Assembly (NCBI RefSeq): GCF_006345805.1
Contig: NW_021833917.1
Location: forward strand, 1 to 62,248
Direction: 5' to 3'
Origin: Octopus sinensis
Lineage: Eukaryota
Length of the DNA stretch: 62,248 nt
Below, piece by piece: positions 560 to 59,308 of the stretch; the first letter of the stretch is position 1; the number at the start of each line of letters is the position of its first letter. The notes beneath the pieces are model-generated. The model was given only the letters and a program-made list of their open reading frames with translations. It was not told where the DNA came from and did not search any database. Position numbers and translations under genes: made by a program.

Positions 560-1150
560 AATCCACCAACTCACCAATTCTCCAATCCACCAACTCACCA
601 ACTCACCAGTATGTTAATCCACAAATCCAACAACTCACCAGTATGTTAATCCACAAATCCACCAATCCACCAACTCACCAGTATGTTAATCCACAAACCC
701 ACCAGTATGTTAATCCACAAATCCAACAACTCACCAGTATGTCAATCCACAAATCCACCAATCCACCAACTCACCAGTATGTTAATCCACAAATCCACCA
801 ACCCACCAGTATGTTAATCCACCAATCTCACCAACTCACCAGTATGTTAATCCACAAATCCATCAACTCACCAGTATGTTAATCCACAAATCCACCAACT
901 CACCAGTGTGTTAATCCACAAATCCACCAATTCACCCGTATGTTAATCCACAAATCCACCAACCCACCAGTATGTTAATCCACAAATCCACCAACCCACC
1001 AGTATGTTAATCTACAAATCCACCAATCCACCAATACACCAACTCAGCAGTACGTTAATCCACAAATCCACCAATCCACCAGTATGTTAATCTACAAATC
1101 CACCAACTCACCAGTATGTTAATCCACCAATCCACCAACTCACCAATTCA
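560..1150. repeat. Minisatellite built from CCACCAA(C/T) and CACCAGTATGTTAATCCACAAAT modules, unit about 30-40 bp
   Basis: CACCAGTATGTTAATCCACAAAT recurs more than a dozen times; degenerate flanks extend to about 400-1290. Confidence 0.95.
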
Positions 1151-10358: not shown

Positions 10359-12075
10359 TTTCTTATGGGTGATTTCAACTTCCCCTATGTCAAATGGCAT
10401 GAGGGCCTCATGCTCTCAGGAATGACTCATTGCAAACAATCACAGGTGGAGTCCCTGCTGAACCTCACCAATGCCCTATTCGTGGAGTAGATTTGTGCTC
10501 AGACCAACTGGGGTGAATAACATTTTTGATCTCTGTTTCGCAAAGAATACGGACTTGGTTCATAATGTGAAAATGACGCCAAGCAAGCCAGAGGAGGGAA
10601 TAATATGCCCAATCCATAAAGGAAGAAGCAGAGCAGATGCCAAAACCTATAGGCCTATCTCTCTGACTTTGCACATCAGCAAAGTCATGGAACGGGTAGT
10701 CAGAGGGAAGCTAATTGCATTTCTTGAAGAAAATTACTTGCTGAGTGATACTCAGCATGGCTTTCGACCAGGGAGGAGCTGCCCGACCCAGCAGTTACAG
10801 CACTATGACTGGGTGTTGAGGCAGTTACTCGACAACGCAAATGTGGACGTAATATATTTGATTTTGAAAAAGCTTTTGATAAAGTGGATCATGGTATAAT
10901 ATGCCACAAACTGCGTGATCTCGGCATAACTGGAAAACTTGAAGAGTGGTTACATGACTTTCTGAAAGATAGAATTTAGGCAGTAGTTGCGAATGGAGCC
11001 ACCTCATTGAAAACTCAATTAGTGAGCGGTGTTCCATAAGACACTGTCTTGGGACCACTGCCTTTCATAGTGTCCCTCCCAGATATGCCCTCAGCTGCCC
11101 AGATAGCCACCCTTGCTAGCTACGCAGACGATACGAAAGTCTTGTAGAAAATACAGAACCCCAGCGATGTCGCACACCTGCAGCAAGAGCTGGACTCAAT
11201 TTACAGATGGGCTGAGGTTAATAATATGCAGTTTAATGCTGAAAAAATCCTAGCCCTGCGCTACCAGCTTCCAAAACTGAATATTAAACTTACAGGATAC
11301 ACAGGTCCACAGGGGATTACAATCCCAGAGCTTAAATGAGTGAGAAACCTGGATATTGACATGAGTGATGATACCGCTTTCGAAGAGCACATTACCAGGA
11401 TGGCGACAAAGTGCAGACGACTGGCTGGATGGATCCTAAGAACGTTCAGAACCAGAGAGAAGGAAACGATAAGGGTCCTATGGAGGACATTCGTCCTCAG
11501 GCGACTGAACTACTGCTGCCAGCTATGGTCACTCAACAGTGTAAAATTAACAGTAGACCTTGAAGCAATCCAGTGAAGCTTCACGAAGAAGATCGACTCA
11601 CTGGAACAGCTCAGCTACTGAGAAAGACTGAAACAGCAAAGGCTCTACTCCCTGGAGCGAAGGCGAGAGAGGTATGCAGTAATATACATCAGGAAGATCC
11701 TGGAATGAATTGTGCCAAATTTTGGCATTGAAAGCTACACCAATGCCAGAACGGGACGACACTGCATAGTGCCAAAGATCCCAGCAACGCCATCGCACTT
11801 CAGGACCAGTTACTGCAACAGCCTGGGCTTCAGGGGCCCTCAGCTTTTTAATATTCTCCCAAAAAGCCTAAGGGACCTACACATAGTGGATGTAGAGGTC
11901 TTCAAATCAAAACTGGACCTCTTCCTGTCGAGAGTCCAAGATGAATCTACCTCGGAAATGAGGATAGCGACATCAAACTCCCTCATTCACCAAATACCAC
12001 ATATTAGAGTGTAGCAAAACGGTGGTGCCCCAGCATGGCCGGAATGGCTGGAGCACTGAGCAGAAACTAGAAAAA
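10359..12075 (+). mobile_element. Decayed CR1/L2-group LINE ORF2 (APE remnant, RT, 3' tail)
   Basis: GDFN at 10368-10379; YRPISLT; QHGFRPGRSC; YADD at 11121-11132; multiple stops and frameshifts; internal deletion near 10590. Confidence 0.93.
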
Positions 12076-20726: not shown

Positions 20727-21057
20727 GGCACTTTGGACAAGTGTCTTCTACTATAGCCTCAGGTCGACCAAAGTCTTGTGAGTGAACTTAGTAGAAGGAA
20801 ACTGAAAGAAGCCCGTCGTATATATTCATGTGTGTGCGTGCCTGTGCTCCCCACCCCCGGCCATCGCTTGACAACCGATGCTAGTGTGTTTATGTCTCCG
20901 TCGTACATTAGCGGTTCGACAAAAGTGACGATAGAATAAGTACTAGGCTTACAAAGAATAAGCCCTGAAGTCCAGTTCTTCGGCTAAAATCCTTTAAGGC
21001 GGTACTCCAGCATGGCCACAGTCAAATGATTGAAACAAGTAAAAGAATAAAAGAGTG
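20727..21057 (+). mobile_element. SINE family A, head missing
   Basis: From GGCACTTTGGACAAGTGTC through the CCAGCATGGCC tail. Confidence 0.85.
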
Positions 21058-22297: not shown

Positions 22298-22849
22298 AAT
22301 AGCGTTTAAGAGTGCCATTTGGTATTTATCCCAAAGTTATTGTTATTGAAAAGCAAAATCAATTCCGCCGAGGTCGACTTTGCCTTTCATCGTTCAGGGT
22401 CAATAAATTCAGTACCAGTGAAATACTGGGTCGATGTGATCGACTAGTCCCCTCCCCACAAATTTCAGCCTTGTGCCTTTAGTAGAAAGATTAGCCCGTT
22501 GGAAAAGGAAAGAATCCTAACATCAGGTTACAACAAGTTGCCTTAGATGCCAAGAAACCTGCTATCGGGTTACAGCAAGTAACCTTAGATGCCAAGAACC
22601 CTCCGAAGTATCCCAGCTGTCCCTAATAACACTGTTTTCAGCAGCTATACTAAACTGGGTTTTATGCTTATTTGCTCTATCCATCTGTTCAGATCTTTAG
22701 GGATAGTTCCCCATGTACCTAAAACTACTGGGGTATATTTTTCCCCGCACTTTTCATAGTCTCTGTAATTCGATAGCTAAGTCTTGGCACTTTATTATTA
22801 TTATTATTATTAAGGGCTGCGAGTAGAAAAAATATATTGAGTCACTTAA

Positions 22850-23112
22850 AGCGGCGAGCTGGCAGAATCGTTAGCACGCCGGGCGAAATGCTTAGCAGTA
22901 TTTCGTCTGTCTTAACGTTCTGAGTTCAAATTCCACCCAGGTCGACTTTGCCTTTCATCCCTTCGGGGTCCGTAACTTAGCGGTTCGGCAAAAGAGACTG
23001 GTAGAATAAGTACTAGGCTTACAAAGAATAAGTACTGGGGACGATTTGCTCGACTAAAGGCGGTGCTCCAGCATGGCCGCAGTCAAATGACAGAAACAAA
23101 TAGAAGATAAAA
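22850..23112 (+). mobile_element. Chimeric SINE: family B head fused to family A tail
   Basis: Junction CCCTTCGGGGTC|CGTAACTTAGCGG at about 22970. Confidence 0.85.
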
Positions 23113-23694
23113 AAGATGAAAGATAAAAATTATTATTGTTGTTGTTGTTGTTGCAAGCAGGTAAATAAATCTTGAGAAATGCTTTTATTGTTGCTTTATT
23201 TTTTAGACTGGTAGGGGAGTTCACCGAGTTTTTTTTTCTTTTTTTCTGTTTAACGTTTAATCAGGGAAGTAGAGCAGCGCTTATAAAACTTAATTTTTTT
23301 CCCCAAGGTTTCCGAGACTGTTGGTAGCAAGGGAGAAAGTTATCCTTAAACCAGAGATTTAGACCGAACGCCTGCGGCAGAATGAACAGAGCTAGACAGG
23401 CAAGGACCAGGTGGTGTTGTTAAAACGGGAGATGGATTAAGATTAAGCTTACCACCTAGAGAGGAGAGAGAGAGAGAGAGAGATTCAGAATGCAGAAAAA
23501 ATATTCTCCGCAAGGTTTCTCGTTCAATGCTCGAAATATCCCGCTAATCCATTATCCTTGATTGGTGTTTCATTTCCTCAATCCGCGAAAGGACGAACTG
23601 CAAAATCGATATTTATGAGATTTGAACTCGGAGCACATACTATCGGAGTGTATACTACAAGCATTTTTCTTCCGACAATTTTCCAGAATTTGAA

Positions 23695-33026: not shown

Positions 33027-33464
33027 ATATTAGTAGTATTAGTAGTAGTAGTAGTTGCTGTTGTGCTTTTATTTCTTTACTCATCACTAGATTAAGGCCA
33101 TGCTGGGGCACAGACATGAAAGTACTAGTCGAACTAATCTACCATAGCTTGAGGTGAGATTTGGCTACTATTTCGAGCAGGTCGAAGTGACCACGTTGAA
33201 GATTCTTCATTAGTTTCGTTCGGAGCCCCCGAAGGATTTTAATGACTTACGTGGCAAGTTCAAATCATGCCGAAGTGGAAGGGGAGACCTGGTGTAGAGA
33301 GAGATAAGGTCGCGAATGGTGATGAAAGGATCTTTGACAAACCCAGCTGATTGAATGTTAAAAAGCCCTCCCCCCGCCAAAAAAAAAGTAAAGCTCTTTC
33401 CCGTATCATGCCGACACATAAGGGCCGGTTTTCCGATTTCCATCGTGTATATATATATTCCCCA

Positions 33465-33590
33465 CCTGGACGGGACGCCAGTCCCTCGCAGGATTACTCA
33501 TTTTTGTCATCTGAGTGGACTGGAGCGACATGAAGTGAAATGTTTTGCTCAACGCGTCGCCCAGTCCAGGAAACGAAACCACAATCGGTT
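33465..33590 (-). mobile_element. SINE family D fragment
   Basis: CTGAGTGGACTGGAGCGACATGAAGTGAAATGTTTTGCTCAA motif. Confidence 0.65.
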
Positions 33591-33639
33591 ACAATGCCAC
33601 TACAAATAGCCTCGCCTAACTTAGCTAGTAGCTCCTCCT

Positions 33640-34520
33640 CCTTTCAATTTTTTCTAACGCTACATCTTTGCTAAGCCCTATCGATATTACCTTATACTCT
33701 CTTTTGAGAGCCCCACCACCTGCTGTAGACGAGCCCACCACCACTGTCAACTTTAGCTTAACTAAATTGTTGACCCGGTTCCTATAAGCCTTACGTGCCG
33801 GAAACGATATGTTCAGCTTCCACTAACCGGGTCCAGGCCTACTCGTCTTATGTAGATCAACCATACAGATTACAAACTTGTGATCTTTATAAGCGACCGT
33901 TTTAAAAAGTGGACATCCTACACTATTACTGTCTACCCTTCTAGTAAAAATTATGTCTGTATTCGATCTAGATGACTCTATGCAGTTGGTCTAGGTCCAC
34001 AGTGGCGAATTAGGAGAACCTTGTCGGTACCTGTCAGACAGTTGAAACTAGCTGATCAGGTGCTTGAGGCTTTTGCATCTCCCGCTTTTATCAGCTACTC
34101 CCTCAGCAATCCCAGCGTGCATCTAAGATGCCGTTCCAGACCCCCGCTTACAGTAAAGGGCGAGACATACCCAGAAAGGCTTCCAAACGCTTAAAGAAAT
34201 CCGGCAGTTTGACCCCGGTAGGGGTGTAGACGGCCACCAGTCTTATTTACTACCTTTGTTATTGCTCACGTTCAGGGCCACTAACTTACCGTCCGGGTCC
34301 TTGAAGATCGACCTTACCCCGAGAGCCAGGCCTTTCCTAAACAGCACTGCCACCCCACCTCCCATTCTCGGCCGACTAACAGATGCAGAGATCTGACAGT
34401 CGTCGAAAATGGGAGCTAGTGCGCGTGTGCTGGAAATCTTGGTCATGCTGATAGCAATTACGTCCAATTCTAAAGACCTAAGGTTGTTGAGCAATATATC
34501 GTTCATTGTTCTTTAACGAT
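33640..34520 (-). mobile_element. Decayed Tx1/L1-clade LINE, APE endonuclease region
   Basis: Translations give GGGVAVLF, DPDGKLVAL, a DHK motif and PG*WKLN (the L1/Tx1 GYWKLN signature); in-frame stops. Confidence 0.8.
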
Positions 34521-34617
34521 TTGTTCGTCTCCTGTCTCCTCTAACACCAATTGGTGTGCTGGGTTTGAGACAGATTATCTTAAATACTAGAGTATTTTCT
34601 TGCAAACTTTCGTGTCT

Positions 34618-35252
34618 GTGCGGTAAGATCTTGCTTCCCAACCACATGATTCCAGGTTGAGTCTCACTGCGTGGCACTATAGGTAAGTGTCTTCTATATA
34701 AAGCTTCGGGCCGACCAAAGCCTTGTGAGTGGATTTGATAGACGGAAACTAAGAGAAGCGCGTTGTATATATATATATATATATTTAAAAAAAGGAGATG
34801 TGGAACACGAGTTGTGATATATAAAAAAAGGAAATGAAGAAAATGCTGACAAAATAATTTAAGTAAAGGAGAGTGTATTTAATTAGGTGAAAGTTCTTTT
34901 TACCGGTTGCGCATTTGTTATGCTTATCAAAAGATATTTTTTTAAAGAGAGATAGAGTTCCTTTCTGATAGATTTTTTTCTCTTCTCAGATAAGAGAAAA
35001 AAATCTATCAGAGAGGAACTCAATCTCTCTTTAAAAAAATACTTTTGATAAGCATAACAAATGCGCAACCGGTAAAAAGAACTTTCACCTAATTAAATAC
35101 ACTCTCCCGTACTAAAATTATTTTGTCAGCATTTTCTTCATTTCCTTTTTTTATATATATATATATATCAGACTGTGTGTGTGTCTTTGTTCGACTAAAA
35201 CTCTTCAAGACGGTGCCCCAGCATGGCCGCAGCCTAACAACTGAAACAAGTA
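34618..35252 (+). mobile_element. SINE family A split at its (TA)n by a foldback insert
   Basis: 5' half at 34618-34770; tail TTCGACTAAAA...CCAGCATGGCCGCAG at about 35185-35252. Confidence 0.75.
34817..35158. repeat. Foldback: arms about 168 bp, 7-nt loop, decayed HHR in each arm
   Basis: 34817-34984 is a near-perfect inverted copy of 34992-35158; loop CTCAGAT. Confidence 0.95.
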
Positions 35253-39871: not shown

Positions 39872-40399
39872 CTGTTCAAGACGAAGGTTAACGGCATTAA
39901 TGTCGCATGGTTCGGGAACGTGCAAAGGCCATGGACACAGGCGCCGCTTCAGGTCAAAAAGAACACACACGACACGACACACAAACACACACACACACAC
40001 CCACACACACACACAATATAGTACAATAAATTAATTATATATGTATTTAAATACATTTCAATGACCGGCCAGGCCGCAAGCAAGGCGCCAAAAACTTCCT
40101 GTCCAGCCTTGCGGTCCTTAAAATTTTCTTCTTTAATGTATCTGGTGTCGCAAAAATGTTGTCTGGACCAATAGCAGCCCATCTTGGACGTCCTTCATCT
40201 CTATTCGAATCGTGCAAAACATTTTTATTGCAAGGGGTCGGATCAAATTGGTTTAAATAATAGTATGTGTAACTTCTAGTAAATGTTTTTTTTTGTTTTG
40301 CTTCATCACACAATTGTGAGTATGTATATATGATTGTATCCTTTATTTTTTATTTTTTATATGTTTCAGTCCAATGACTTGGCCTGTTGGAGTACCGCC

Positions 40400-41076
40400 A
40401 TATGTTATGCTATGTATGTATGTATTGTAGGTATGTATGTATGTTGTATGTATGTATGTATGTGTGTGTGTGGTGTGGTGTTGATGTATGTATGTATGTG
40501 TATGTATGTATGTATGTATGTATTATGGATGTATGTATGTCATATGTATGCTATATGTAGGTATGTATGCTGCAATGTATGTATGGATGTATGGTAGTGT
40601 ATGTATGTATGTATGTATGTATGTATGTGTGTATGTATGTATGTATGTATGTATGTATGTATGTATGTGTGTGTTGTATGTATGGGTATGTATGTATGTA
40701 TGTATGTATGTATGTATGTATGTGTGTATGATGTATGTATGTATGTATGTATGTATGTGTGTATGTATCATGTATGTGTGTATGTATGGATGTATGTATG
40801 TATATGTATGTATGTATGTATTGTATGTTGTGTATGTATGTATGTATGTATGTATGTAATATGTATGTATATATGTATGTATGTATGTATGCATGTATGT
40901 AGTGGTATGTATGTATGTATGTATAGTGTATGTATGTATGTATGTATGTATGTATGTATGTATGTATGTATGAGTGTATGTTATATGTAGTAGTATGTAT
41001 GTATGTATTATGTATGTTGCATGTATGTATGTATGTATTTATGTGTCTGTATGTATGTATGTATGTACATATGTAT

Positions 41077-58001: not shown

Positions 58002-58031
58002 GTTGTTGTTGTTGTTATTATTATTATCATT

Positions 58032-58191
58032 AGGCGCATGAGTGGCTGTGTGGTAAGTAGCTTGCTTACCAACCACATGGTTCTGGGTTCAGTCCCACTG
58101 CGTGGCACCTTGGGCAAGTGTCTTCTACTATAGCCTCGGGTCGACCAAAGTCTTGTGAGTGGATTTGGTAGAGGGAAAAGAAGCCTGTCGT

Positions 58192-58192
<1 letters not shown>
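58032..58192 (+). mobile_element. SINE family A 5' half
   Basis: AGGCGCATGAGTGGCTGTGTGGTAAG head. Confidence 0.88.
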
Positions 58193-58255
<63 letters not shown>

Positions 58256-58273
58256 ATATATATATATATATAT

Positions 58274-58328
<55 letters not shown>

Positions 58329-58504
58329 TACCGCTGTGCCATTGCGCATCCATCGATATTATTATAGCATCGATTATAGTTTTGATTAAATTTTCGCTGG
58401 AATATTGAAACTTGGGTTTTATCTAGTTGAAACTTGGTGACATCACGGACGATATAAAATAAACATGTGGATCACATATACACACACAAAAAAAGGAGAT
58501 GCGT

Positions 58505-58574
58505 ATTTTATTTTATTTCATTTTATCTAGTTTCAGCTCACGAGCTGTGGCCATGCTGGGGCACCGCCATTTGT
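58505..58574 (-). mobile_element. LINE-type 3' tail fragment
   Basis: GGCGGTGCCCCAGCATGGCC..GCTGAAACTAGA(TAAAA)n, similar to the LINE end at 12021-12075. Confidence 0.7.
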
Positions 58575-58598
58575 AAAAGATTTGTGCCAACCACCGGA

Positions 58599-58663
58599 TG
58601 CCGAAACCCGGGATCGAACCAGGGACCTTTAGATCTTCAGTCTAACGCTCTCCCAACTGAGCT
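58599..58663 (-). pseudogene. tRNA-Phe(GAA) lacking the 5' acceptor strand
   Basis: AGCTCAGTTGGGAGAGCGTTAGACTGAAGATCTAAAGGTCCCTGGTTCGATCCCGGGTTTCGGCA matches canonical metazoan tRNA-Phe positions 9-73; the first 8 nt are absent; anticodon at 58636-58638. Confidence 0.92.
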
Positions 58664-59308
58664 CAGGTTTAATTTTTTCAAAGATACAGACTTTTATGGA
58701 AACGTCTTAACTCATATACAGTGCACAGATACAAAGCCTCAGAGCTTCGGTCATACCAGGTTATACGATTCCCCGGCGATCTCCTATGCTTCAGCCTTAC
58801 CCATATGAAACATTGTCATGGCTACAATACTTCAGTTAGGACAGGAAATTATTGAATTAAAACCCAGGCTTATTTTTAGCAAAAGCTGTAAAAGCTGAAG
58901 TTTCAATTCAAATGTGTGTGCATTTTTGTTTATGTACGTGTGTGTATGTGTCTATCAGCGTGCGCATGTCTACTGCCACTACATATATATATATATATAC
59001 ACATACATACATACGAATACAAGTAAAGAAAACTCGATACTCAGGAAAGAGTTAAATATCATCATAGACAGATGCCACTCAAGTTTCATGTCTACCAGGT
59101 GGGCAAAAATCTCCCATTGAGATAAAGCAAACAAATATGTGTGTATATGTGTCTGTGTATGCATGTGTGTGTGTGTGTGTGTGCGTGTGTGTGTGTGTGA
59201 GTGTGCGTGGTGTGAGTGTGTGTTTGCGTGTGCCTACGTCAGAACTTATATATATATATATATGTGTATATATATATATATATATATGTAATTATATATA
59301 TGTATATA

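What the first reader, a model, noticed from the sequence alone, without database searches (positions are those of the whole stretch)
58505..58663. 5'-truncated tRNA-Phe plus trailer fused to a LINE 3' tail: candidate proto-SINE or retro-chimera
Seen on the minus strand: unmutated tRNA-Phe nt 9-73 with no 5' acceptor strand and no CCA, a ~20-nt trailer ending in TTTT (58575-58578), then immediately a LINE-type tail GGCGGTGCCCCAGCATGGCC...(TAAAA)n. Established: U6/L1 chimeras form by template switching at Pol III oligo-U ends, and many SINEs are tRNA heads joined to LINE tails. Inference: reverse transcription switched from a LINE RNA onto a pre-tRNA and stopped short of its 5' end.
Basis: partly seen in the sequence, partly recalled or inferred. 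Interest (0 to 1): 0.7.

Follow-up and report, generated by a model that had tools for sequence, protein, structure and literature searches.

The report
Truncated tRNA-Phe copy fused to LINE tail
A copy of a phenylalanine tRNA that lacks its first eight bases sits head-to-tail against the 3' end of an octopod jumping gene (LINE); it is most likely a one-off by-product of that LINE's reverse transcriptase, a known kind of event and the proposed first step in SINE birth, but this copy is probably a dead end.

Summary
On the minus strand, 58663-58599 matches tRNA-Phe(GAA) nt 9-73 at 65/65 positions. It has no 5' acceptor arm and no CCA. A unique 24-nt linker ending in TTTT follows, then about 70 nt that are a real LINE 3'UTR. 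The same tail occurs about 16 times in the window. It directly follows the stop codon of reverse-transcriptase ORFs here, in an ENA contig and in Argonauta hians. It folds into two hairpins with compensatory changes and ends in short repeats. Homology to other tails stops at the base next to TTTT.

The best reading is one retro-insertion of an RNA-level chimera: LINE 3'UTR plus an unprocessed pre-tRNA-Phe, with cDNA synthesis ending at tRNA nt 9.

Three things are not shown: genomic copy number, the parent gene's trailer, and a target-site duplication or empty site. I could reach no Octopus genome. One caveat is that the linker weakly resembles the pre-motif segment of one SINE copy (4/2000 shuffles, about 0.03 corrected), so the junction could lie at A73 instead.

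The TTTT between head and tail argues against a working SINE. This is a new member of a known kind, of modest interest.

The parts
58599..58663 (-). tRNA-Phe(GAA) nt 9-73: D arm, anticodon arm, variable loop, T arm, 3' acceptor strand and discriminator A73. No nt 1-8 and no CCA. B box GGTTCGATCCC at 58620-58610. The A box is intact except T8.
   Evidence: ARAGORN. Rfam tRNA 41.7 bits, model positions 9-63. 65/65 identity to an intact spider tRNA-Phe gene.
58575..58598 (-). 24-nt linker TCCGGTGGTTGGCACAAATCTTTT. Best read as the 3' trailer of a pre-tRNA-Phe ending in the Pol III terminator T4 (58578-58575). The alternative is a diverged extension of the LINE/SINE 3' module.
   Evidence: Unique in the window. 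Not covered by any tail homology in the self-BLAST. Borderline similarity to the copy at 20996: 6/500 and 4/2000 shuffles.
58569..58574 (-). ACAAAT, the first bases of the LINE-derived part. Aligns with ACTAAA before the motif in SINE copies and with CAAAAC / CAACGAT after the LINE stop codon.
   Evidence: BLAST alignments to other tails reach 58574. Tail comparison.
58549..58568 (-). Tail hairpin 1, GGCGGTGC-CCCA-GCATGGCC, the conserved core of the LINE 3'UTR.
   Evidence: 13 copies against 0 expected. 27 nt ATGGCGGTGCCCCAGCATGGCCACAGC identical to LINE L001. Helix 1 is 96% paired across 15 tails. MFE fold.
58534..58548 (-). Tail hairpin 2, A-CAGCT-CGTG-AGCTG. Variable sequence with a conserved stem.
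   Evidence: Compensatory changes at two stem pairs across LINE and SINE copies. Fold -18 kcal/mol, z = -2.6.
58504..58533 (-). Tail terminus AAACTAGATAAAA followed by (T/G)AAA(T)A short repeats. This is the 3' end of the insertion; the exact end within the A-rich run is uncertain.
   Evidence: Sequence. Other copies end in the same AAAC plus short tandem repeats.
10380..12075 (+). Decayed, frameshifted LINE copy with the endonuclease-end GDFN motif, an RT domain and a C-terminal FKSKLDLFL motif. Its stop codon lies about 10 nt before the same tail (motif at 12021-12040). It shows that the tail is LINE-derived.
   Evidence: Three-frame translation. Pfam RVT_1 E = 3.6e-22. Relatives in Argonauta hians and an ENA contig carry the same tail.

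Best explanation
Window 58663-58504 (minus strand) is a single, young, probably inert retro-insertion made by an octopod LINE that recognises its own structured 3'UTR.

Proposed mechanism:
1. Reverse transcription began on the LINE RNA's 3' end (short repeats, hairpin 2, hairpin 1).
2. About 70 nt in, roughly at the end of the LINE's 3'UTR, it continued on the 3' oligo-U end of a nascent, unprocessed pre-tRNA-Phe.
3. It copied the 24-nt trailer and the tRNA body, then ended at tRNA nt 9.
4. The cDNA was then joined to the chromosome.

What is shown: the anatomy, the LINE origin and structure of the tail, the position where tail homology stops, and the perfect identity of the tRNA part.

What is inferred: that the two RNAs were joined by template switching and not by ligation, that the linker is a genuine trailer, and that this locus is the primary event and not a copy of a family.

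Expected consequence: the A and B boxes could still drive Pol III, but transcripts should stop at TTTT before the tail. The copy therefore cannot readily propagate.
For: - The tRNA part matches nt 9-73 at 65/65 positions, with no 5' arm and no CCA.
- The tail follows RT ORF stop codons in window 12021, L001, L002 and L003.
- 27/27 nt around hairpin 1 are identical to LINE L001.
- The two hairpins are 91% paired, against 42% or less when the partners are slid, with compensatory pairs. The fold is stable.
- Homology to all other tails covers only 58504-58574 and ends at the base next to TTTT.
- The linker, tRNA part and upstream flank are unique in the window.
- In the LINE lineage closest to this tail, the ORF stop lies 10-15 nt before the motif, which leaves no room for the linker to be LINE sequence.
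- A second bipartite element on the same tail lies at 22848-23127, so module joining does happen in this genome.
- Precedents: tRNA/LINE-1 chimeras (PMC11838501), retro-copies of unprocessed nuclear tRNAs (PMC5322556), and template switching as the route to SINE modules (PMC4758252).
Against: - No target-site duplication brackets the unit. The best shared word is no better than in shuffles, and the A-rich candidate is not significant.
- The linker resembles the pre-motif segment of the SINE copy at 20996, at the same position relative to the motif: 18/25 identical, 4/2000 shuffles, about 0.03 after correcting for 16 comparisons.
- Copy number in the genome is unknown.
- Known mammalian U6/L1 chimeras usually keep the full 5' end of the small RNA, whereas this one is 5'-truncated.
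Confidence: 0.5

Rival explanations
1. It is a 5'-truncated copy of a young, multi-copy SINE family: tRNA-Phe head, short linker, LINE tail. The family would have been founded elsewhere, either by the same kind of fusion or by Pol III read-through from a tRNA-Phe gene into a LINE tail inserted just downstream of it.
For: - The architecture of tRNA head plus partner-LINE tail is the standard SINE plan (PMC3747384, PMC4758252).
- The window holds at least two abundant SINE families, and one of them uses this very tail.
- Octopus vulgaris is reported to have about 900 recently active SINE families (PMC13282606).
- 5' truncation is common for LINE-mobilised copies.
Against: - There is only one copy in 62 kb, against about 10 and 15 or more copies of the two established SINEs.
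- TTTT between head and tail should terminate Pol III before the tail.
- 65/65 identity to the tRNA is unusual for SINE heads.
- No related read-through ORF was found in the protein collection. This is weak evidence, because octopod DNA is scarce there.
Confidence: 0.25
2. The linker is not a tRNA trailer. The tRNA copy is fused directly at A73 to a roughly 95-nt extended LINE/SINE 3' module of the type ...GTTCGRCTAAAAYYCTTYAA|GGCGG, and the TTTT is incidental. This concerns the junction only. It is compatible with either a one-off chimera or a SINE copy.
For: - Similarity to the copy at 20996 is position-locked (TCCAGTTCTTCGGCTAAAATCCTTT, 18/25 identical). 6/500 local and 4/2000 global shuffles score as well.
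- Copies at 35207 and 33117 show that a longer pre-motif module exists, including in a LINE.
Against: - After correction for 16 comparisons the result is only about 0.03, and the other extended copies are not significant.
- The linker lacks the GTCGA...TCGAC hairpin of that module.
- Hairpins 1 and 2 match the L001/12021 LINE lineage, which has coding sequence where the module would be.
- A tRNA 3' end at A73 without CCA is a short-lived processing intermediate (established tRNA biology).
Confidence: 0.3
3. Independent events. A resident tRNA-Phe gene acquired a tail-only (extremely 5'-truncated) LINE insertion right behind its terminator, and separately lost its first 8 nt and upstream region by deletion or rearrangement.
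For: - Tail-only copies exist in the window at 40401 and 35207.
- The neighbourhood shows rearrangement: a SINE 5' half at 58031-58252 lacks its 3' half.
- No TSD ties the two parts together.
Against: - It needs two coincidences: the LINE 5' end landing exactly at the last T of the terminator, and a breakpoint inside the tRNA gene.
- None of the other roughly 20 tails examined (window and loci L001-L003) adjoins a tRNA.
- No repeat boundary or 5' acceptor remnant lies upstream.
Confidence: 0.1
4. The product is the same, but the two RNAs were joined by RNA ligation before reverse transcription (the RtcB-type route shown for U6/L1), not by RT template switching.
For: Ligation precedes retrotransposition of U6/L1 chimeric RNA in human cells (PMC6789731). 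The sequence of the product cannot tell the two routes apart.
Against: RtcB-type ligation needs a 2',3'-cyclic phosphate or 3'-phosphate end. A nascent Pol III transcript ends in 3'-OH (established biochemistry). The route also requires a LINE RNA fragment that begins precisely at its 3'UTR.
Confidence: 0.08

Closest known systems
Bipartite chimeric retrocopies of small RNAs with LINE-1 (U6/L1, and tRNA/L1 chimeras of primates; Buzdin 2003 as cited in PMC4758252; PMC4476161; PMC11838501)
   Same: A small Pol III RNA copy is joined in one insertion to a 5'-truncated LINE 3' end. The junction is at the small RNA's 3' oligo-U end, as in U6/L1, and the tRNA part is truncated.
   Different: - The LINE here is not L1. 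It is an octopod LINE with a structured 3'UTR and short-repeat terminus instead of poly(A).
- The tRNA part is nearly full length, in sense orientation, and carries a trailer. Primate tRNA/L1 chimeras are mostly half-tRNAs in antisense orientation.
- No TSD could be shown here.
tRNA-derived SINEs with a partner-LINE tail (stringent type, e.g. UnaSINE1/UnaL2; octopus OK/OR SINEs of Ohshima & Okada 1994, as cited in PMC4758252 and PMC3747384)
   Same: tRNA-related 5' part with A and B boxes, plus a 3' tail shared with a LINE that carries a stem-loop and short terminal repeats.
   Different: Only a single copy is seen. The head is 100% identical to the tRNA and lacks nt 1-8. There is no body region. 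A TTTT terminator sits between head and tail.
Tailless retropseudogenes of processed and unprocessed tRNAs in mammals (Schmitz 2004; PMC5322556)
   Same: Retro-copies of nuclear, unprocessed tRNA transcripts made by a LINE RT.
   Different: Those are 3'-truncated, stand alone without a LINE part, and have clear TSDs. This one is 5'-truncated and fused to a LINE tail.

Membership tests
LINE-mediated bipartite chimeric retrocopy (U6/L1 type) | The 3' part is a 5'-truncated LINE 3' end in sense orientation | tested here: met
   The same tail follows RT ORF stop codons in four LINE copies. 27/27 nt are identical to L001.
LINE-mediated bipartite chimeric retrocopy (U6/L1 type) | The 5' part is a small-RNA copy in the same orientation that ends at its native transcript 3' end (oligo-U) at the junction | tested here: inconclusive
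   Tail homology ends at the base next to TTTT. But the parent trailer is unknown, and the linker has borderline similarity to one SINE copy.
LINE-mediated bipartite chimeric retrocopy (U6/L1 type) | One pair of target-site duplications brackets the whole chimera | tested here: inconclusive
   No significant repeat was found. TSDs of other copies on this tail are also short or unclear.
LINE-mediated bipartite chimeric retrocopy (U6/L1 type) | Unique or low-copy locus, not an amplifying family | not testable with these tools
   Only one copy lies in the 62-kb window. No Octopus genome was reachable.
tRNA-derived SINE with LINE tail | tRNA-related head with internal Pol III A and B boxes | tested here: met
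   The B box GGTTCGATCCC is intact and the A box lacks only T8. The 5' acceptor arm is absent.
tRNA-derived SINE with LINE tail | 3' tail shared with a partner LINE | tested here: met
tRNA-derived SINE with LINE tail | No Pol III terminator between head and tail, so the tail is included in the transcript | tested here: not met
   TTTT lies at 58578-58575, between the tRNA part and the tail.
tRNA-derived SINE with LINE tail | Many dispersed copies sharing the same head-tail junction | not testable with these tools
   One copy in the window. The public collections searched hold no usable octopod DNA.
Stringent-type LINE 3' tail | Lies directly after the RT ORF, has a conserved stem-loop with compensatory changes, and ends in short tandem repeats instead of poly(A) | tested here: met
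   Conserved between the window's species and Argonauta hians.
Stringent-type LINE 3' tail | The tail is required for reverse transcription by the cognate RT | not testable with these tools
   Needs a retrotransposition assay.
Functional tRNA-Phe gene | Complete cloverleaf with a 7-bp acceptor stem | tested here: not met
   nt 1-8 are absent. Rfam matches model positions 9-63 only.

The most novel reading that the evidence does not exclude
This locus, or a near-identical master elsewhere, is the founding stage of a new tRNA-Phe SINE in an octopus. It would be a still-unmutated pre-tRNA-plus-LINE-tail fusion whose weak T4 terminator is occasionally read through. That would capture SINE birth on a stringent, non-L1 LINE before any sequence drift.
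Probability: 0.15. Interest if true: 0.55.

Novelty: new member of a known kind. Interest (0 to 1): 0.35.

Why it matters
The standard model holds that SINEs arise when a LINE reverse transcriptase jumps from its own RNA tail onto a small Pol III RNA. Fresh, undecayed examples are mostly known from mammalian L1, which recognises poly(A). This would be an example on an invertebrate LINE that recognises a structured 3'UTR, with the tRNA still carrying its trailer. That points to the nucleus and to nascent, La-stage pre-tRNA as the place where the switch happens. Octopus genomes carry hundreds of SINE families, so the rate of such fusions may help explain that diversity. As a single unverified locus with a terminator in the wrong place, its direct importance is modest.

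Tried and rejected
- Exact look-up of the 113-aa read-through ORF (58467-58808) and of a 375-aa ORF in public assemblies: not on record.
- Homology search with the read-through ORF: 217 hits, all ordinary tRNA-Phe antisense peptides. None carries the tail peptide or the flank.
- JGI metagenome scans. The fusion pattern gave 0 hits. The tail 22-mer gave four bacterial coding sequences by chance. The collection therefore holds no octopod DNA and the negative result is uninformative.
- GTDB genome scan for the tRNA-trailer junction: 0 hits.
- TSD searches with exact words, local alignment and position-locked alignment: nothing above chance.
- Search for a displaced tRNA 5' arm upstream: none.
- Similarity of the linker to the L001 LINE coding end, which I noticed by eye: not significant, 97/500.
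- Pfam on window ORFs to find a host gene: nothing.
- Pfam on LINE relatives to assign a clade: RVT_1 only.
- Full-text searches for the tail and SINE sequences: no relevant paper.
- I prepared a concatenated-ORF screen for conserved exons but dropped it, because the chance of reaching an orthologous locus was too small.

Full report
**1. What is there**

Read on the minus strand, the locus has this order:
- unique flank ...GAAAAAATTAAACCTG
- AGCTCAGTTGGGAGAGCGTTAGACTGAAGATCTAAAGGTCCCTGGTTCGATCCCGGGTTTCGGCA (58663-58599)
- TCCGGTGGTTGGCACAAATCTTTT (58598-58575)
- ACAAAT (58574-58569)
- GGCGGTGCCCCAGCATGGCC (58568-58549)
- ACAGCTCGTGAGCTG (58548-58534)
- AAACTAGATAAAATGAAATAAAATAAAATA (58533-58504)
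- unique flank CGCATCTCC...

ARAGORN calls tRNA-Phe(GAA). Rfam's tRNA model scores 41.7 bits but matches only model positions 9-63. It is the only RNA family above threshold in the window and in a permissive scan of the neighbourhood.

To have a real yardstick I fetched an annotated animal locus with an intact tRNA-Phe gene (L008, a spider). The window copy is identical at all 65 positions from nt 9 to nt 73 and lacks exactly GCCGAAAT. The antisense peptide of this tRNA is 100% conserved in many animals, so 'unmutated' is a fair description. There is no CCA, and no remnant of the 5' arm lies within 400 nt upstream.

**2. The tail is a real LINE 3'UTR**

The 20-mer occurs 13 times in the window with up to 3 mismatches, against 0 expected. 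A profile search finds about 16 copies.
- Most are the 3' end of an abundant SINE (SINE1). It has a tRNA-like head, an internal microsatellite, and ends ...TCGACTAAA|GGCGGTGCTCC...GCAGTCAAATGACTGAAACAAGTAAAAGA.
- The copy at 12021 ends a decayed LINE. It has a GDFN endonuclease-end motif, an RT domain (Pfam RVT_1, E = 3.6e-22) and a C-terminal FKSKLDLFL motif. Its stop codon lies about 10 nt before the motif.

The closest RT relatives in the protein collection are an ENA contig (68% identity) and two Argonauta hians proteins (58-59%). The fetched DNA (L001-L003) shows the same tail directly after each ORF. L001 shares 27 consecutive bases, ATGGCGGTGCCCCAGCATGGCCACAGC, with the finding.

The tail folds into two adjacent hairpins followed by AAAC and short tandem repeats (-18 kcal/mol, z = -2.6). 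Across 15 tails:
- 91% of cells pair, against 42% or less when the 3' partners are slid.
- Hairpin 1 is conserved in sequence.
- Hairpin 2 keeps its stem through paired changes: UA to CG in four copies at one pair, and CG to UA in the finding at the next pair.

A stem-loop with compensatory changes plus a short-repeat terminus is the signature of 'stringent' LINE/SINE tails (PMC3747384). I could not assign the LINE clade, since Pfam gives only RVT_1. 'CR1/L2-like' is my inference from the tail type.

**3. Where the two parts meet**

A self-BLAST of the locus against the window shows that similarity to other tails covers 58504-58574 and nothing more. It therefore ends at the base next to TTTT. 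ACAAAT aligns with ACTAAA of the SINE copies and with the few bases that follow the LINE stop codon. The linker, the tRNA part and both outer flanks are unique in the window.

This is what is expected if reverse transcription left the LINE RNA near the start of its 3'UTR and resumed on the 3' oligo-U end of a Pol III primary transcript.

Three further points fit an unprocessed, largely unmodified nuclear pre-tRNA as the template (my inference from established tRNA biology):
- a trailer is present;
- CCA is absent;
- copying is error-free through positions 58, 37 and 26, which carry reverse-transcription-blocking modifications in mature tRNA-Phe.

Retro-copies of unprocessed tRNAs are documented in mammals (PMC5322556).

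**4. A caveat on the junction**

I compared the linker with the 70 nt upstream of the motif in 16 tail copies. One copy, at 20996, stands out: TCCGGTGGTT-GGCACAAATCTTTT against TCCAGTTCTTCGGCTAAAATCCTTT, at the same place relative to the motif. 6/500 local shuffles and 4/2000 position-locked shuffles score as well.

Corrected for the number of comparisons, this is about 0.03. Copies at 35207 and 33117 show that some lineages, including a LINE, have a longer pre-motif module. So the linker could be a diverged piece of that module, and the TTTT could be incidental.

Against this reading:
- The other extended copies are not significant.
- The linker lacks that module's hairpin.
- The finding's hairpins match the L001/12021 lineage, where coding sequence occupies that position.

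I put the trailer reading at roughly 2:1. The parent gene or the donor LINE would settle it.

**5. One insertion or two events? One-off or family?**

No target-site duplication ties the unit together. The best shared word (8 nt) is matched by 71/300 shuffles, and an A-rich candidate (TGAAAAAATTAAAC / TGAAATAAAATAAAA) is no better than random A-rich 22-mers. TSDs of the full-length SINE1 copies are also short or unclear, so this test has little power here.

Independent events would need the LINE 5' end to land exactly on the last T of the terminator and, separately, a breakpoint inside the tRNA gene. None of the other roughly 20 tails examined adjoins a tRNA. I rate this at about 0.1.

Whether the locus is the primary chimera or a copy of a young SINE family cannot be decided. 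I reached no Octopus genome through any route.

Against a working SINE:
- There is one copy in 62 kb, against about 10 and 15 or more for the two established SINEs.
- TTTT lies between head and tail, so Pol III transcripts should lack the tail.

For a SINE: the architecture fits, and O. vulgaris is reported to have about 900 recently active SINE families (PMC13282606).

**6. Context in the same window**

The copy at 22848-23127 joins the head of a second abundant SINE (SINE2, which normally has its own different tail) at ...TTCGGGGTC|CGTAACTTAGCGG... to the last 156 nt of SINE1, including the LINE-type tail. So the finding is not the only bipartite element built on this tail here. That fits the view that module joining by the LINE RT is frequent (PMC4758252).

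About 95 nt 3' of the finding, CCAAGTTTCAA|CTAGATAAAAC|CCAAGTTTCAA looks like an 11-nt scrap of the same LINE terminus flanked by an 11-bp duplication. This reading is unproven.

**7. Comparison with known systems, and verdict**

The closest known systems are:
- U6/L1-type chimeric retrocopies and the recently described primate tRNA/L1 chimeras, which are mostly half-tRNAs in antisense orientation (PMC11838501);
- tRNA-derived SINEs on stringent LINE tails;
- tailless tRNA retropseudogenes.

The present case has the anatomy of the first group but sits on a non-L1, structure-recognising LINE, with a near-full-length sense pre-tRNA. RNA ligation before reverse transcription (PMC6789731) would give the same product and cannot be excluded from sequence.

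Verdict:
A retro-chimera is the best reading (0.5), and 'proto-SINE' is unlikely for this copy.
- Novelty: a new member of a known kind.
- Interest: 0.35.

Noticed in passing
window 58405-58437 (minus strand): CCAAGTTTCAA|CTAGATAAAAC|CCAAGTTTCAA is an 11-nt perfect direct repeat bracketing 11 nt. With the preceding AA, those 11 nt reproduce AACTAGATAAAA, whose only other occurrence in the window is the end of the finding's tail (58521-58532). It could be an abortive, ultra-short insertion of the same LINE terminus with an 11-bp TSD. Shuffled windows have 0-2 such repeats in all 62 kb.
   Followed up: partly
window 22848-23127 (+): Hybrid SINE. The head of a second abundant SINE family (GGCGAGCTGGCAGAATCGTTAGCACGCC..., 15 or more copies, normally with its own tail ...GCCCCTTGTGGGTAGTAAAGAAATAGG) is joined at ...TTCGGGGTC|CGTAACTTAGCGG... 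to the last 156 nt of the first SINE, including the LINE-type tail.
   Followed up: partly
window 58031-58345 (+): A 5' half of the abundant SINE1 (head plus internal TA/CA microsatellite) lacks its 3' half. This suggests a deletion or rearrangement next to the finding.
   Followed up: partly
window about 33090-35200 (minus strand): A second LINE fragment with endonuclease-like N-terminal frames ends in a variant tail (GTCTGTGCCCCAGCATGGCC) preceded by a longer module ...GTTCGACTAGTACTTTCAT. It is probably the lineage that donated the SINE1 tail.
   Followed up: partly
window 40362-40401 (-) and 35207-35250 (+): Tail-only copies, extremely 5'-truncated. The copy at 40401 starts at about the same position (ATGGCGG) as the LINE part of the finding.
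   Followed up: partly
window about 600-1110 (+): Minisatellite of 32-40-nt units (CAACTCACCAGTATGT...).
   Followed up: no
L001 (ENA ERZ23491053 scaffold_88453): A 2-kb contig labelled as a metagenome carries an octopod-type LINE (68% identity to the window's RT) with the same tail, so cephalopod DNA is present in that sample.
   Followed up: no
L002 618-659 (-) and 12393-12434 (+); L003 11306-11346 and 19101-19129: Argonauta hians loci carry several copies of the same two-hairpin tail, with different terminal repeats ((ATACAAG)n, (CATTAAAA)n). The tail architecture therefore predates the split between Argonauta and the window's species.
   Followed up: partly
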